Shown here: in pieces, positions 55,068 to 57,582 of the stretch
Layout: every line of letters starts with the position of its first letter
Numbering within the stretch: position 1 is the stretch's first letter
Source of the DNA: Aplysia californica
Taxonomy: Eukaryota
Length of the DNA: 59,485 bases
Direction: 5' to 3'
Assembly (NCBI RefSeq): GCF_000002075.1
Contig: NW_004797826.1
Location: forward strand, 362,587-422,071
Made by a program: the position numbers and the translations under genes
Notes under the pieces: model-generated
What the model was told of the DNA's origin: nothing
Seen by the model: only the letters and a program-made list of their open reading frames with translations
Databases searched by the model: none

Positions 55068-57582
55068 CGCGCGCCCACACACACACACACCCACACACTT
55101 ACACACACAGACACATGCACACGCACACACCCCACACACCCATACATAAACACACTCACTCACCTAACACAGTGAGTGTAGCACTAGAGCGGAGCGGGTT
55201 GTCCCCATCTTTCGGCAACACCTGACATTCAAAAGGGCACTACCCCTCTCCCTCCCTCTCTCTCTCTCTCTCACTCTCTCTCTCTCTCTCTCTCCCTCTC
55301 TCACTCCCTCTCTCACTCCTTCTCCCCCTCTCTCACTCACTCACCTAGCACAGTGAGTGTAGCACTAGCCCGGAGTGGATCATCCCCGTCCTTCGGCAGC
55401 ACCTGACACTCAAAAGTGGCGTCGTCCACCAGGTCAGCATTGACGATCATCAGGTTGAACTCGTCGTCATTGGTGGAGGAGATGGAGTACCGGCTGAACC
55501 CGGGGATGGTGCGGTTGAAACCTGGGGCGGAACAGAAAGGATGATTATAACAGGGATGATTTTTTATCTGTGATGTCGGCAATGATAATGCTGGGTTTTT
55601 TTGTTCCTTTAACCTGCAGTACAACTGATTTTTACGCATGCGACTTTTTCCTTCATCATAGTGTAGTGAAATTCATAGTGCCTTGCATTTTGATTATGTT
55701 ATATAACGTTCCTGAAGAAGCCCCTTAGAGTGTACATATTTCATTATGTCATAAAACGTCAAATGCTCAAGTCTCCATGAACTTTTTGTGTTTTTTTATC
55801 ATACTAACACCTATGATTATGATGATAATTCAGTAATAAGATTAAGAAATACTTTGTTAAATATATAACCCAAGTTTCCACAAATCATTTGCCTACATTA
55901 CAACAATTACCATGATGATGATGACGACGGTGAGGAGGGGGAGGATGATGAAGACAATGACGACAACATTATCTTTATTGTTCGATAATGAAATTCCTTT
56001 ATAAAAGCTACCATTACGGCACAATTTGACCGAATTCATGTACGGCGTGCATGCAGATTTGAATGTCGAAATGTACAGTACAAATTTGAAAAAGCTGATA
56101 CTAATAAATCTAAAAGATATCGACCTTCCTCACGACTGTCAGATTTCAGAACCTCTCAACACAGCAACCAAGATACAGCAGCCAGGACTTAAGGTCTTTA
56201 TGGAAGAAAAAAGCTGTGCTGTGAACAGTAAGTTTTGTGTTTTGTGTTAAATAACACTGTGCTCAGGTCAAAGATTTCTATTCACATCAAATCAAAAATA
56301 ACAAGGGAGGGGTTTATTGTAGTAAGCACTAAGCACCGAAGGCACCATTAATCAACCCAACCCAACCCGACTCGACTCGATTTGATCCGCAACGGGCAGC
56401 CGGTGTAAACAAGATAAGAGTGTGCTGGTTGCATCACTCACCCAGGGGGAAGCCATCCTTGGTCCACTGCACCGCCCCCTTGCGGTCACCAATGACACAT
56501 TTGAGCACCGCCGTCTGGCCGCGGATCACATTGGTGTTCTTGGGGATTTCCGTGAAGTGTTGGATGGAGTCAACTGAGGAGAGATGATACAGATGAAGAC
56601 AATAATGATGATGATGATTTGATGATTATGGTGATGGTGATGATGATCTCAAAATGTACATTATATACCTTTTTGTTTGAAAAGTTTGCCCTACCAAATT
56701 ATGTTACCAGATCACTACCATTATCCTCAAAACGAGATTCTACATCAGACACGGGCAAACTACCACCTGCAGGCCTGACCAGCCTGCAAGCAACTTCAGA
56801 CCGTCCCATGAGTCAACTCAGTTAATTGTACTTATAATGAGGGTGGCCCAGGGTGAGTTGATAATTACAACAAAACAAACTGTCTGTCTTGAAAATAAAA
56901 TTACTAGAACAATATCAAATATTACTTTAATGTAGTGACCTTTAGTGACAATTGCTACAGAGTGCGTTTTAGTCTCACTTTTAGGAGCTTGAGTATTTCA
57001 AACGATTTCACCCAATTTTCTCCTGCTTTGGCCTGCGAGATATTCAGAAGCCATTAATCTAGCCCCTGACTTAGCCGTGCATGCCCAAGCCTGCTCTATA
57101 ATAACAAACGAATCAGCACAGAGAAAGTCCCGTACACTTTGTTGTCGCCAACATTTCAACTGCCCTGACCCCCAGTGAAACCTCTTATTTAGTCACAGTT
57201 TTACGTAACTTGCAACAAAAAATAGGTTACGTAAGTGCCACAGGTTAGAGTTGGTATTCGAGAGTAAAATACAATTGTGTACAAGCAAAATAAGGGGAAA
57301 GATAGGGACAATAGATCATAGATGTTAGATGGGAAAGAAGAAGCAAACGATATAAGAGCACCCACCAACCACCCATGATGGGAGACCTATATTAACGTAG
57401 CATGAGGATACGTCGTCAAAACCCCAACAAATAACAACATAATAATATGTGTCTGTCTTTTTAATCCCCAAAAGGGTGCGAACCAGAGAGTTTACAGTAA
57501 CTGTAAACCCTCTCTGGTGCGAACGCTTACCTGCAATAAATAAGGCCGGTAACAACGAGAGCGCGTGCAGCAGGGTCCTCAT
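19504..57582 (-). CDS. NPHS1: Nephrin / SYG-2 / Sticks-and-stones-like IgSF adhesion receptor (multi-exon gene span): SP + 9 Ig + FN3 + TM + cytoplasmic tail ending GHLV
   Basis: 22 GT-AG exons assembled by hand with matching phases. Ig1 motif LKC..G..GAVQWTKDGFPLG, Cys-less Ig7, FN3 (LRWKAGFDGGLPQSF), TM helix plus RRKKR, and C-terminal EMRGHLV resembling human nephrin ELRGHLV. The symbol denotes the family; orthology is untested. Confidence 0.93.
21150..21562. mobile_element. MITE family A copy
   Basis: aatcaggcactcgaca ... tgacgagcgtctgatttcaccacaatgccacacat. Confidence 0.7.
22618..22760. mobile_element. Palindromic MITE family B (second copy at about 47820-47960)
   Basis: cgcaacct..tttcttgtc / gacaagaaagcactgaggttgcg; shared core tgaaaatgtgacttc..cactctttg. 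Confidence 0.7.
23051..23293. mobile_element. Inverted-repeat element (MITE core)
   Basis: aatatgagggggtgagatgcaaaacccgcta / tagcgggttttgcatctcagcccctcatatt. Confidence 0.7.
26958..27829. mobile_element. Head-to-tail pair of about 430-bp MITE family A copies
   Basis: 26958-27392 and 27398-27829; subterminal inverted repeat gtggaatcaggcgctcgtca / tgacgagcgcctgatttcac; further copies near 47283 and 59050-59460. Confidence 0.8.
28917..29091 (-). CDS. NPHS1: Penultimate exon, Pro-rich (GMNELSDRPPSRPSSRSGKTPPPPPTRSSSRGGDYIPPLPARNYDPEE...)
   Basis: 175 nt, phase 0-1; PxxPxR SH3-ligand-type motifs. Confidence 0.88.
29200..29552. repeat. Degenerate about 19-bp repeat (agaagacagggatagtc) filling a short intron
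   Basis: Recurring agaagac motif. Confidence 0.7.
29622..29722 (-). CDS. NPHS1: Cytoplasmic exon (PYKMAHPRSKKGFYENGVQNGDIYEFKSGSRGK)
   Basis: 101 nt, phase 1-0; ccacag| and AAG|gtaaga; joins the next exon in frame. Confidence 0.82.
30028..30332 (-). mobile_element. tRNA-derived SINE, same family as 38017-38370
   Basis: Reverse-complement similarity over head, body and tail. Confidence 0.8.
33555..33970. repeat. 38-bp minisatellite built from catcacctct subunits
   Basis: cagtccatcacctctcttttgtcagatcatcacctcta units. Confidence 0.92.
34838..35052 (-). mobile_element. tRNA-derived SINE family 2 (related copies at about 1706-1799 and 17370-17588)
   Basis: Minus-strand A box TGTAGCGG and B-box-like AGTTCGATTCC; all three share the tactggc start. 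Confidence 0.65.
35672..36175. repeat. Degenerate about 20/41-bp repeat (gaaacaatttaaccactgtggaacaattccg..caaga)
   Basis: More than 20 aacaatt subunits. Confidence 0.88.
36177..36281 (-). CDS. Candidate cytoplasmic exon (GKTGFAAVISELETLSYLHENQNRRVEGWPRRPEP; may start at 36323)
   Basis: GC-rich island in an AT-rich intron; 105 nt, phase 0-0, stop-free; donor gtaaat. Confidence 0.45.
36965..37032 (-). CDS. Candidate cytoplasmic cassette exon (acceptor choice ambiguous)
   Basis: Strong tract ttaac..cttttttccctgcccttgtag and donor CGA|gtaagc; open as phase 1-0 (first AG) or phase 0-1 (second AG, exon end 37025). Confidence 0.4.
37699..37862 (-). CDS. NPHS1: Exon 19: cytoplasmic, Tyr-rich (AGASETTSHTNTFELYG...SYGTYDKSMDDFSDDYIRDYE)
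   Basis: 164 nt, phase 1-0; good polypyrimidine tract. Confidence 0.88.
37900..38810. repeat. Degenerate about 60-bp minisatellite interrupted by a SINE
   Basis: ttatccacagtttgacaccaacaaaagaaataactag-like units on both sides of the SINE. Confidence 0.75.
38017..38370 (+). mobile_element. Full-length tRNA-derived SINE (CORE-like block, (TAT)n tail)
   Basis: A box TGGCCTAGTGG, B box GGTTCGAATCC, TGTGTCCTTGGGAAAGGCACTT, tail gcgctatacaaatgctatttattattac. Confidence 0.88.
39123..39284 (-). CDS. NPHS1: Exon 18: transmembrane (IPVIIILVVCIVGVFILALNVGLILFFI-QRRKKR)
   Basis: 162 nt, phase 1-1; hydrophobic helix plus basic stop-transfer. Confidence 0.94.
40388..40486 (-). CDS. NPHS1: Exon 17: FN3 C-part (GLDLGTLYEFAVLAFNDRGES...)
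   Basis: 99 nt, phase 1-1; FN3 Tyr-corner motif. Confidence 0.93.
41245..41433 (-). CDS. NPHS1: Exon 16: FN3 N-part (SKPYPPSNITFVNATSNSITLRWKAGFDGGLPQSFRVRY...)
   Basis: 189 nt, phase 1-1. Confidence 0.93.
42604..42784 (-). CDS. NPHS1: Exon 15: Ig9 C-half (NNRAVRSGSKY...EDYGAYVCTAANSKG...LSGT)
   Basis: 181 nt, phase 0-1, donor gtaagt. Confidence 0.93.
42972..43022 (-). pseudogene. Degenerate duplicate of the exon 14 3' end plus donor (LRCKAERALSVSICLTR|gtcagt)
   Basis: Aligns to 43174-43211; all differing codons are non-synonymous. Confidence 0.8.
43161..43279 (-). CDS. NPHS1: Exon 14: Ig9 N-half (FKPVIDKSPETSRSA...LKCNAEGAPSVSI...); 3' end lies in an N gap
   Basis: Visible 43174-43279. 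The end at about 43161 is inferred from the degenerate copy at 42972-43022 and the required phase 0. Confidence 0.85.
44161..44439 (-). CDS. NPHS1: Exon 13: Ig8 (YPARVV...FACKVDANPMVPNIVTW...DAGTFKCVADNRIG)
   Basis: 279 nt, phase 1-1. Confidence 0.94.
45611..45886 (-). CDS. NPHS1: Exon 12: non-canonical Cys-less Ig7 (FKPEF...INLTAYANPPNVTY...DKGNYTIKGEN)
   Basis: 276 nt, phase 1-1. Confidence 0.92.
46572..46874 (-). CDS. NPHS1: Exon 11: Ig6 (FPPAHV...LTCVSSSSNPAAEITWLRNG...FGCRATN)
   Basis: 303 nt, phase 1-1. Confidence 0.94.
46888..47070. repeat. 23-bp minisatellite x8 abutting the exon 11 acceptor
   Basis: acaagggtcaaacattg(g/a)gaaat units. Confidence 0.95.
47976..48143 (-). CDS. NPHS1: Exon 10: Ig5 C-half (GNKLI...DDNGARYTCKASNRATPTPL...LTVH)
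   Basis: 168 nt, phase 1-1. Confidence 0.92.
49167..49292 (-). CDS. NPHS1: Exon 9: Ig5 N-half (YPPNAPHINGY...MTCISIGGNPIADVKWYK)
   Basis: 126 nt, phase 1-1. Confidence 0.92.
49834..49990. repeat. 76-bp tandem duplication
   Basis: tgtattgaaacaaagc...catacatctc twice. Confidence 0.9.
50063..50218 (-). CDS. NPHS1: Exon 8: Ig4 C-half (ETYSESPDGGYITTS...VTCRASN...LTVL)
   Basis: 156 nt, phase 1-1. Confidence 0.92.
50899..51051 (-). CDS. NPHS1: Exon 7: Ig4 N-half (FPPTSVTMSG...LTCVSSNSNPRATIMW)
   Basis: 153 nt, phase 1-1. Confidence 0.9.
51794..52081 (-). CDS. NPHS1: Exon 6: Ig3 (FPPGPPEISGY...LTCVSKGGNPLGTVTWYRN...DNNAVYRCQVTN)
   Basis: 288 nt, phase 1-1. Confidence 0.94.
52524..52697 (-). mobile_element. 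Representative copy of a recurrent about 170-bp retroposon 3' end (about 12 copies in the gene)
   Basis: Plus-strand consensus tttagtaagagttttacggcacttgcaacacaataaggtcata..ttacaagagagt..gcaaaccacaccagagcacccgccaaccaccca. Confidence 0.8.
53146..53487. repeat. 42/43-bp minisatellite x8, each unit containing the exon 5 end and 5' splice site
   Basis: gacaacagtgacaagtgcagtactcacagagtatactgag; actcac ends at 53173, 53216, 53258, 53301, 53344, 53387, 53430, 53472. Confidence 0.96.
53473..53659 (-). CDS. NPHS1: Exon 5: Ig2 C-half (VTENIRY...NGAVYRCEASN...VSLSIL)
   Basis: 187 nt, phase 0-1; its donor is the first unit of a tandem array. Confidence 0.92.
54188..54333 (-). CDS. NPHS1: Exon 4: Ig2 N-half (VPCEPPKILDY...LTCEARLGRPAASIDWYRNGIK)
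   Basis: 146 nt, phase 1-0. Confidence 0.92.
55164..55233 (-). other. Duplicate of the 3' 70 nt of exon 3 with intact donor (FECQVLPKDGDNPLRSSATLTVL|gtgagt)
   Basis: Ungapped alignment to 55345-55414, 11 differences. Confidence 0.92.
55345..55521 (-). CDS. NPHS1: Exon 3: Ig1 C-half (FNRTIPGFSRYSI...DDATFECQVLPKDGDDPLRASATLTVL)
   Basis: 177 nt, phase 1-1, cag|..|gtgagt; D-x-A-x-F-x-C motif. Confidence 0.93.
56442..56573 (-). CDS. NPHS1: Exon 2: Ig1 N-half (VDSIQHFTEIPKNTNVIRGQTAVLKCVIGDRKGAVQWTKDGFPLG)
   Basis: tctcctcag| acceptor, |gtgagt donor, 132 nt, phase 1-1; not in the ORF track. Confidence 0.93.
57531..57582 (-). CDS. NPHS1: Exon 1 (coding part): signal peptide MRTLLHALSLLPALFIA
   Basis: ATG with an in-frame TAA 4 codons upstream; hydrophobic leader; donor CAG|gtaagc; 52 nt, ends phase 1. 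Confidence 0.85.

What the first reader, a model, noticed from the sequence alone, without database searches (positions are those of the whole stretch)
55164..55414. Half-exon duplicate of Ig1 F/G strands diverged almost only at synonymous sites: possible alternative ligand-binding surface
Seen: 181 nt downstream of exon 3 lies an ungapped 70-nt copy of its 3' end with an intact |gtgagt donor. Of 11 differences, 9 are synonymous (GAG/GAA, CTG/TTG, AAG/AAA, GAC/GAT, GAT/GAC, CCA/CCG, CGG/CGC, CTA/TTA, and the third base of GAT/AAC). Only 2 change the protein (D>N, A>S). A neutrally decaying copy should be mostly non-synonymous, as the exon 14 copy is. Known: nephrin/SYG-2 proteins bind Neph/SYG-1 through the GFC face of Ig1. 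Inference: the copy was or is translated. It could be the remnant of a Dscam-style mutually exclusive exon. Or it could be used through the duplicated CAG|GT, with a donor inside exon 3 (55402) spliced to the AG in the copy (55222), the tandem-duplication route to a new intron. Its upstream tract is GA-rich and weak.
Basis: partly seen in the sequence, partly recalled or inferred. Interest (0 to 1): 0.8.

Follow-up and report, generated by a model that had tools for sequence, protein, structure and literature searches.

The report
Stray half-exon copy in sea-slug nephrin
The first intron after the ligand-binding exon of the sea hare's nephrin gene holds an old 83-base copy of that exon's end and splice site; it is most likely an inert leftover of a small tandem duplication, and its "silent-only" differences are suggestive but do not show that it is used.

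Summary
An ungapped 83-nt direct repeat (72 nt of the 3' end of exon 3 plus 11 nt of intron, 11 mismatches) lies 181 nt start-to-start downstream, on the minus strand. It sits between a GA-rich and a GT-rich microsatellite, next to an assembly gap.

The gene is Aplysia californica nephrin; the RefSeq protein matches the window's exons. The differences are 9 synonymous and 2 amino-acid changes (D>N, A>S).

The parent exon is constrained, so its own changes must be synonymous. With exon constrained and copy neutral, the pattern has P about 0.003-0.018, not about 1e-4.

Nothing shows use:
- The only record of the Aplysia protein found carries the canonical exon 3.
- Two RNA-like contigs run straight through the proposed internal donor.
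- That donor is very weak.
- No acceptor lets exon 2 join the copy in frame.
- Biomphalaria and Lymnaea have a single exon 3.

The read tool masked the copy, so neither its transcription nor the tandem arrangement was tested independently.

Best reading: an old partial tandem duplication of an exon end with its donor, now an intronic pseudo-exon. Current use as an alternative Ig1 F/G segment stays possible at about 8%.

The parts
56442..56573 (-). Exon 2 of nephrin. It encodes Ig1 strands A-C (...VIRGQTAVLKCVIGDRKGAVQWTKDGFPLG) and ends in phase 1.
   Evidence: Boundaries come from matching to P0155, with the translation. RNA-like contig X15 record 23 joins it to exon 3.
55345..55521 (-). Exon 3 of nephrin, 177 nt, phase 1-1. 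It encodes Ig1 strands C'-G (GFNRTIPGF...FECQVLPKDGDDPLRASATLTVL). Its donor is TAG|GTGAGT.
   Evidence: It is 100% identical to P0155 residues 62-120. The Pfam V-set/I-set match to its C-terminal half is below the cut-off. The donor scores 11.4 bits.
55334..55416 (-). Parent segment of the repeat: the last 72 nt of exon 3 plus the first 11 nt of intron 3.
   Evidence: the repeat finder family D5; alignments.
55401..55405 (-).
   Evidence: CAG|GTGCTG scores 1.3 bits; only 1.6% of 64 real donors score as low. Contigs X15 record 23 and X13 record 6 run through it unbroken.
55236..55333 (-). GA-rich imperfect microsatellite spacer between the parent segment and the copy. It contains the in-frame TAG at 55242-55240.
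   Evidence: It shows no homology (20% identity) to the 98 nt that follow the copy.
55153..55235 (-). The diverged copy: 72 nt of exon-3-end sequence (55235-55164, PFECQVLPKDGDNPLRSSATLTVL) plus GTGAGTGAGTG. Its donor is intact, TAG|GTGAGT at 55164|55163. A candidate acceptor CAG| lies at 55222|55221.
   Evidence: The donor scores 11.4 bits. The acceptor scores 6.4 bits, the 22nd percentile of real acceptors.
55036..55152 (-). GT-rich imperfect microsatellite that follows the copy.
   Evidence: families D1 and D3.
54868..55035 (.). Assembly gap (168 N) directly after the GT-rich tract. It was left unfilled.
54349..54680 (.). Very high-copy interspersed repeat in intron 3. It swamped the read laying.
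   Evidence: Word depths of 1e5-1e7 and hundreds of joints. Further copies lie in the window (families D12 and D16).
54188..54333 (-). Exon 4 of nephrin (VPCEPPKILDYNNGSTVEV...), the start of Ig2.
   Evidence: The acceptor scores 9.0 bits.

Best explanation
Intron 3 of the Aplysia californica nephrin gene carries an old partial tandem duplication: the last 72 nt of exon 3 together with its splice donor. Microsatellites have since grown on both sides of the copy.

The copy has no usable 5' end. It is truncated inside the exon, an in-frame stop precedes it, and no acceptor is in frame with exon 2. It therefore sits in the intron as a pseudo-exon fragment with a strong decoy donor, and it is normally spliced out with the intron.

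Most of the silent differences are expected to have accumulated on the functional exon 3, where only silent changes are tolerated. The copy itself has changed little.

Shown: the repeat, the gene identity, the exon map, the splice-signal strengths, the canonical mRNA form and the single exon 3 in two other gastropods.

Inferred: that the arrangement is real in the animal, that the copy is untranslated, and which lineage carries which change.
For: 1. The repeat and its limits are clear. Homology stops at GCC/CTTTT on the 5' side and 11 nt into the intron on the 3' side.
2. TAG lies three codons upstream of the copy. From exon 2 (phase 1), both candidate acceptors give frameshifts with stops (sequence).
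3. The internal donor scores 1.3 bits against a median of 8.2 for 64 real donors.
4. The only Aplysia nephrin protein in a 5.8-billion-protein collection is a one-member cluster with the canonical exon 3.
5. RNA-like contigs join exon 2 to exon 3 and continue through 55403/55402 to at least 55351.
6. With the exon constrained and the copy neutral, 11 differences giving 2 or fewer replacements and no stop occurs in 0.3-1.8% of simulations. That is uncommon but not extreme for a feature picked out because of this pattern.
7. At three silent sites (GAA, AAA, GAC) the copy shares the state of both outgroups. At the A>S site the exon does. This fits silent change on the exon lineage and replacement on the copy lineage.
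8. A second diverged exon-end copy in the same gene (exon 14) is clearly decaying: 5 of 5 differences are non-synonymous.
9. Lymnaea has its own two-unit tandem repeat that starts 13 nt before the exon 3 donor. Earlier notes of this scan list exon-end-plus-donor arrays in two other Aplysia genes (leads only, not checked here).
10. There is no paralog elsewhere in the assembly from which a piece could have been misplaced.
Against: - The synonymous excess is still nominally significant at about 1% under the fair null. It also differs from the exon 14 copy (Fisher p about 0.005 from the counts).
- Taken at face value, silent-site divergence (pS 0.50; 0.74 in the first 16 codons) is about ten times the replacement-site divergence (0.056). 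This needs either luck or faster silent change on the exon lineage.
- The copy has no stop, no indel and a perfect donor.
- Its CAG| acceptor with the CCCTTTT tract scores within the range of real acceptors.
- Transcription of the copy was not tested, because the read tool masked it.
Confidence: 0.55

Rival explanations
1. Relic of a once-translated duplicate. Either exon 3 was once fully duplicated and used as a mutually exclusive pair, or the half-exon was once spliced in. The copy evolved under protein-level constraint for most of its history. It then lost its 5' part or its use recently, so it has not yet decayed.
For: - dN/dS is about 0.07 (dS 0.81, dN 0.058).
- The pattern has P about 0.01 under the fair neutral-copy null.
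- It contrasts with the decaying exon 14 copy.
- The frame and donor are intact.
- Exon 3 is a symmetric phase 1-1 exon, so a pair would have had to be mutually exclusive.
Against: - There is no trace of homology upstream of GCC/CTTTT.
- Biomphalaria and Lymnaea have a single exon 3.
- No closer relative could be examined.
- The outgroup comparison places several silent changes on the exon lineage, which needs no constraint on the copy.
- The scenario requires two extra events: a full duplication that came into use, and then a truncation.
Confidence: 0.15
2. Assembly artefact. The 83-nt island between two microsatellites and next to a gap does not lie in intron 3 of the animal. It would be a misplaced piece of an unassembled paralog, a very divergent haplotype or foreign DNA, whose silent-only differences reflect divergence between two functional genes.
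For: - The window has 18 N gaps.
- It contains at least one clear gap-flank artefact, a 100-nt stretch repeated at 100% identity on the outer sides of two gaps (48335-48434 and 48972-49071).
- The island is flanked by low-complexity sequence and a gap.
- Divergence between two functional sequences would explain the silent bias without any special splicing.
- Independent read support could not be obtained.
Against: - No second nephrin-like locus above 36% identity exists in the 927-Mb assembly.
- Ordinary allelic difference here is about 1-1.5%: 2 silent SNPs in 169 nt in contig X15 record 23, and other individuals hold 0.61-0.65 of the 31-mers. That is far from 13%.
- The junction GGGGTAGTGCC|CTTTTGAA is unique sequence inside one gap-free contig stretch (55036-58158). 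It is not a microsatellite join.
- A paralog exon would carry coding sequence upstream, not a GA repeat with a stop codon.
Confidence: 0.12
3. Currently used alternative Ig1 F/G segment. A minor isoform splices from the CAG|GT inside exon 3 (55403|55402) to the CAG| in the copy (55222|55221). It then splices from the copy's donor (55164|55163) to exon 4. This swaps the 58 nt that encode the end of strand F, the FG loop and strand G, giving D>N and A>S on or near the CFG binding face.
For: - The route preserves frame and length (sequence).
- The silent bias is present.
- The copy's donor is as strong as the real one, and its acceptor is usable at 6.4 bits.
- Intron birth from a tandem duplicate containing AGGT is an established mechanism (PMC3265369 and PMC4974935).
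- The CFG face of D1 mediates Kirrel/nephrin binding (PMC8628261).
Against: - The internal donor scores 1.3 bits, lower than 98% of real donors, and 35% of all GTs on this strand score as well.
- The tract upstream of the acceptor is purine-rich, with no evident branch-point motif.
- No alternative isoform is on record for Aplysia nephrin.
- Two RNA-like contigs from two runs cross the internal donor unspliced.
- The two amino-acid changes are conservative. The first falls at a position that already varies among gastropod orthologs (D, G or S).
Confidence: 0.08

Closest known systems
Tandem duplication of an exon's 3' end together with its splice donor (intronic decoy-donor repeats)
   Same: A direct repeat covers the last bases of an exon and the first bases of the intron, and it places a second, equally strong donor inside the intron. 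A two-unit example sits at the same exon 3 / intron 3 boundary in Lymnaea stagnalis (L006 2653-2996, period 171, 93% identity). Earlier notes of this scan list such arrays in Aplysia MSH2 and KIFAP3 (unchecked here).
   Different: This case has only two units. They are old (13% diverged) and include an unusually long exonic part (72 nt). The rest of the unit has been replaced by microsatellites, so the tandem unit can no longer be aligned. The exonic part shows a silent-site bias.
Intron creation by tandem duplication of a segment containing AGGT (Rogers model; Hellsten et al. 2011, PMC3265369; potato RdRp case, PMC4974935)
   Same: Both copies keep CAG|GT. Splicing from the upstream GT to the downstream AG would restore a full-length, in-frame message.
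   Different: In the known cases the new intron is spliced efficiently and the duplicated exon parts flank it. Here the normal donor at the exon end is retained and strong, the internal GT is a very weak donor, and no such splice was seen.
Mutually exclusive tandem-duplicated exons (Dscam-type exon clusters)
   Same: A second version of an Ig-domain coding segment lies next to the first, with mostly silent differences.
   Different: The copy is not a whole exon. It has no own acceptor in the right phase and has a stop codon upstream. There is no second exon 3 in Biomphalaria or Lymnaea, and no isoform is on record.
Nephrin / SYG-2 / Sns-Hbs family of IgSF adhesion receptors (the host gene)
   Same: - Residues 24-416 align collinearly with SYG-2 D1-D4 (4ofy_D, E = 4.8e-40).
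- The protein has many Ig domains, one FN3 domain, a transmembrane segment and a cytoplasmic tail.
- Gastropod orthologs are named nephrin.
   Different: The host gene shows nothing unusual. The RefSeq protein uses the canonical exon 3.

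Membership tests
Nephrin / SYG-2 / Sns family (host gene) | N-terminal Ig domains collinear with SYG-2 D1-D4 | tested here: met
   P0155 residues 24-416 align in one stretch with 4ofy_D residues 5-400, E = 4.8e-40.
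Nephrin / SYG-2 / Sns family (host gene) | Long ectodomain of Ig domains followed by one FN3 domain, a single transmembrane helix and a cytoplasmic tail | tested here: met
   Precomputed Pfam hits are many Ig families plus PF00041. The hydrophobic stretch IPVIIILVVCIVGVFILALNVGLILFFI is seen in P0155. Ig hits fall on single exons of the window.
Nephrin / SYG-2 / Sns family (host gene) | The window encodes this protein | tested here: met
   Exon-by-exon matches of P0155 are all on the window's contig, most at 89-100% identity and a few HSPs that run into intron at 73-81%. 20 of 22 junctions were resolved exactly.
Nephrin / SYG-2 / Sns family (host gene) | Heterophilic binding to a Kirrel/Neph/SYG-1 partner through the CFG face of Ig1 | not testable with these tools
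   Known for the family (PMC8628261). No binding data exist for the Aplysia protein.
Mutually exclusive tandem-duplicated exon pair | Second copy is a complete exon of the same length and phase, with its own acceptor and donor | tested here: not met
   Only the last 72 of 177 nt are copied. An in-frame TAG lies upstream. The candidate acceptors are out of frame with exon 2.
Mutually exclusive tandem-duplicated exon pair | Both versions found in transcripts or annotated isoforms | tested here: inconclusive
   Only the canonical form is on record and in two RNA-like contigs. The copy region was masked by the read tool.
Mutually exclusive tandem-duplicated exon pair | Pair conserved in related species | tested here: not met
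   Biomphalaria glabrata (L005) and Lymnaea stagnalis (L006) have a single exon 3. Closer relatives were not available.
Intron born from a tandem duplicate containing AGGT | Two tandem copies that each keep an AG|GT, so that splicing between them restores the reading frame | tested here: met
   CAG|GT lies at 55405-55401 and 55224-55220. The removed piece is 181 nt and the replaced piece has equal length and frame.
Intron born from a tandem duplicate containing AGGT | The upstream GT works as a donor and the downstream AG as an acceptor | tested here: inconclusive
   The donor scores 1.3 bits, below 98% of real donors. The acceptor scores 6.4 bits, the 22nd percentile. No such joint was seen, but the region was masked.
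Exon-end-plus-donor tandem duplication (decoy donor in intron) | Direct repeat spanning the exon/intron boundary with the donor consensus kept in each unit | tested here: met
   Both units end in TAG|GTGAGTGAGTG. The donor scores are identical at 11.4 bits.
Exon-end-plus-donor tandem duplication (decoy donor in intron) | Head-to-tail units alignable over the whole period | tested here: not met
   Only 83 of 181 nt align. The 98 nt after each unit are 20% identical, GA-rich versus GT-rich. This is compatible with microsatellite turnover but not shown.

The most novel reading that the evidence does not exclude
A tandem duplication inside the Ig1 exon of a molluscan nephrin has created a young 181-nt intron and a 58-nt alternative exon end. 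The animal would then make two versions of the FG loop and G strand on the face that binds Kirrel/Neph partners. This would be a living example of alternative splicing born by the AGGT-duplication route, in a synaptic and filtration adhesion receptor.
Probability: 0.08. Interest if true: 0.65.

Novelty: new member of a known kind. Interest (0 to 1): 0.25.

Why it matters
If the copy is inert, as is most likely, it is one more exon-end-plus-donor duplicate in a repeat-rich mollusc genome. It matters mainly as a caution in two ways. A silent-only pattern between an exon and its stray copy is much weaker evidence of function than it looks, because the parent exon supplies silent changes by necessity. 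Such decoy donors can also mislead gene models.

If the copy were spliced in, it would be a rare observable intermediate of intron and isoform birth by tandem duplication. It would sit at the ligand-binding surface of a nephrin-family receptor in a neurobiology model animal.

Tried and rejected
1. Read evidence. Read laying masked 55036-55350 as repeat, and a very high-copy element in intron 3 flooded the output. The copy, the canonical exon 3 to exon 4 joint and the 55403-55221 joint could not be assessed.
2. Paralog or misplaced piece. DNA and protein searches of the whole assembly with exon 3, and with the full protein, found no second locus. Rejected as far as the assembly goes.
3. Ordinary allele. 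Diversity is about 1-1.5% against 13% here. Rejected.
4. Word search with the 59-aa exon peptide found nothing within its length limits. Exact look-ups of the 100-aa genomic ORF and of P0155 found no contigs, so no independent contigs of this locus were obtained.
5. The both-lineages-neutral null (P about 1e-4) was rejected as the wrong null and replaced by exon-constrained, copy-neutral.
6. Extension of homology upstream of the copy or into the spacer: none found, with or without gaps.
7. Cassette inclusion of the copy after a full exon 3 gives a frameshift with TAG (read). It could only be a poison exon and cannot be a coding variant.
Exons were searched singly by reference, and junctions were located in a script only by matching to the RefSeq protein.
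9. The N gap next to the copy was left as it is.

Full report
**What is there**

The minus strand of the window carries a multi-exon IgSF gene. Reading 54200-56200 on that strand shows exon 3 ending ...ACTGTGCTAG|GTGAGTGAGTG. A second ...ACTGTGTTAG|GTGAGTGAGTG follows further into the intron.

The repeat finder reports the pair as one two-copy family: 55153-55235 and 55334-55416, 83 nt, 87% identity, spacing 181. A direct comparison gives 11 mismatches and no gap. Homology ends abruptly on both sides. A gapped alignment adds only GCC, with a 1-nt deletion, on the 5' side.

- The 98 nt between the units are an imperfect GA repeat.
- The copy is followed by an imperfect GT repeat and then a 168-N gap.
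- The 98 nt after each unit are only 20% identical.
- In the whole 927-Mb assembly, exon 3 matches only itself and this copy, by DNA and by protein.

181 is the period, and the gap between exon end and copy is 109 nt. The repeat is 72 exonic plus 11 intronic bases.

**Which gene and organism**

A profile-free search of 1.84 billion representatives with the 59-aa exon 3 peptide gave a 1320-aa protein as best hit, at 75% identity. That protein and its relatives are gastropod nephrins.

One of them, "nephrin [Aplysia californica]" (P0155, 1355 aa), contains the window's exon 1-4 translations exactly. It matches the window's contig exon by exon, mostly at 89-100% identity. P0155 aligns collinearly with SYG-2 D1-D4 (4ofy_D, E = 4.8e-40). 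It has many Ig domains, one FN3 domain and a transmembrane segment.

Matching P0155 to the window resolved 20 of 22 junctions:
- exon 2: 56573-56442
- exon 3: 55521-55345 (177 nt, phase 1-1)
- exon 4: 54333-54188

Exon 3 encodes the C'-to-G part of Ig1. The copied part is the end of strand F, the FG loop and strand G. The CFG face of D1 is the known binding face in Kirrel/nephrin-type receptors (PMC8628261).

**The silent-site pattern**

In the 23 shared codons there are 11 differences: 9 synonymous and 2 replacements (D>N, A>S). There are none at second codon positions. Nei-Gojobori counts over 24 codons are S = 18.2, N = 53.8, 9 synonymous and 3 non-synonymous differences, dS = 0.81 and dN = 0.058.

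If 11 random substitutions are thrown onto the sequence, 2 or fewer replacements with no stop occurs in 0.007-0.05% of trials. Exon 3 is a working exon, so every change on its own lineage had to be silent.

I simulated one constrained lineage and one neutral lineage with equal mutation input, conditioned on 11 differences. The observed outcome then has P = 0.003 at ts/tv parameter 1, rising to 0.018 at 8. The observed 9:3 transitions to transversions put it near 0.01-0.015. That is suggestive, but weak for a feature that was picked out because of this very pattern.

Outgroup comparison is near saturation (Aplysia versus Biomphalaria dS 1.5-1.7), so it is only a hint. At three silent sites the copy shares the state of both Biomphalaria and Lymnaea, so the exon changed. 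At the A>S site the exon shares their state, so the copy changed. This is what an inert copy predicts.

Two points go the other way:
- Silent-site divergence is about ten times the replacement-site divergence.
- The exon 14 copy in the same gene (43212-43174 versus 43023-42985) has 5 differences in 39 nt, all non-synonymous. The two copies therefore differ, at Fisher p of about 0.005 from those counts.

**Can the copy be spliced in?**

The copy is preceded by an in-frame TAG three codons upstream.

From exon 2 (phase 1), joining at either AG in front of the copy shifts the frame into stops. The copy therefore cannot replace exon 3 as a whole. Added after a complete exon 3 as a 58-nt cassette, it runs into TAG.

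I scored these sites with weight matrices built from 64 introns of the Aplysia, Biomphalaria and Lymnaea nephrin genes:

| Site | Score | Comparison |
|---|---|---|
| Copy's donor (55164\|55163) | 11.4 bits | Equals the real exon 3 donor; top 0.1% of all GTs on the strand |
| Copy's acceptor (55222\|55221) | 6.4 bits | 22nd percentile of real acceptors |
| Internal donor CAG\|GTGCTG (55403\|55402) | 1.3 bits | Lower than 98% of real donors; matched by 35% of all GTs |

The tract upstream of the acceptor is purine-rich apart from CCCTTTT.

**Transcript and annotation evidence**

The Aplysia nephrin cluster in the 5.8-billion-protein collection has a single member, with the canonical exon 3.

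Four public runs of the same organism were laid on 54100-56560. A 751-nt contig from an RNA-like run (X15 record 23) joins exon 2 to exon 3 and continues through 55403/55402 to 55351. A second run (X13 record 6) has a contig that does the same within exon 3.

The tool masked 55036-55350 as repeat, and a very high-copy element at 54349-54680 swamped the tables. So the copy itself, the canonical exon 3 to exon 4 joint and the proposed joint could not be seen. Transcription of the copy and independent support for the tandem arrangement remain untested, and both read tools were exhausted.

**Relatives**

The nephrin loci of Biomphalaria glabrata (L005) and Lymnaea stagnalis (L006) keep the same exon 3 boundaries and have one exon 3 only. 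No closer relative of Aplysia was in the protein collection.

Lymnaea has its own tandem repeat at the same boundary: two 171-nt units at 93% identity, starting 13 nt before the exon 3 donor. Earlier notes of this scan list exon-end-plus-donor arrays in two other Aplysia genes (leads only). Duplications across exon/intron boundaries therefore seem common in these genomes.

**Artefact?**

For an artefact:
- The window has 18 gaps.
- It has at least one plain gap-flank duplicate at 100% identity (family D19).
- The copy is a small island between microsatellites, next to a gap.

Against an artefact:
- No paralog exists in the assembly.
- Normal allelic difference is about 1-1.5%.
- The spacer/copy junction is unique sequence within a gap-free stretch.

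I give about 12% to an artefact.

**Verdict**

| Reading | Probability |
|---|---|
| Old partial tandem duplication of the exon 3 end with its donor, now an intronic pseudo-exon fragment with a decoy donor | about 55% |
| Relic of a formerly translated duplicate | about 15% |
| Assembly artefact | about 12% |
| Currently used alternative F/G segment by the AGGT-duplication route | about 8% |
| Unassigned | remainder |

The kind of feature is known and this instance is new. Interest is low to moderate unless RNA data show the variant.

Noticed in passing
window 42985-43023 versus 43174-43212 (minus strand), flanking the N gap 43024-43173: A second diverged exon-end copy lies in the same gene, at exon 14. 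The segment after the gap repeats 39 nt of the segment before the gap with 5 differences, all non-synonymous (LKCNAEGAPSVS versus LRCKAERALSVS). It then runs to its own donor, AGG|GTCAGT, followed by a GT-rich tract. The RefSeq protein reads ...SVSISWTR there, so the true exon end lies in the gap, and the copy has lost the conserved Trp (ICLTR).
   Followed up: partly
window 48335-48434 and 48972-49071: A 100-nt stretch is repeated at 100% identity, each copy abutting an N gap (48435-48636 and 48872-48971). This looks like a gap-flank duplication made by the assembler.
   Followed up: no
window 54349-54680 (intron 3); related pieces at about 52524-52700, 53021-53122, 41455-41642 and 43380-43567: A very high-copy interspersed repeat, SINE-like by size. 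Public-run contigs pile up on it to word depths of 1e5-1e7, with hundreds of different joints. It spoiled the read laying.
   Followed up: no
L006 2653-2996 (Lymnaea stagnalis nephrin, exon 3 / intron 3 boundary): Lymnaea has an independent tandem repeat at the same boundary: two 171-nt units at 93% identity. The first unit starts 13 nt before the exon 3 donor, so a second CTTACAGTTTTAG|GTAA donor lies in the intron.
   Followed up: partly
window 55436 and 55469: RNA-like contig X15 record 23 differs from the assembly at two third-codon positions of exon 3 (both T>C on the coding strand, silent). This gives a local allelic difference of about 1.2%.
   Followed up: no
window 46858-47110, 14436-15142, 16660-17328, 33517-34010 and 35664-36197: Several long minisatellite arrays (periods 23, 42, 45, 38 and 38 nt) lie in introns of the gene and downstream of it.
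   Followed up: no
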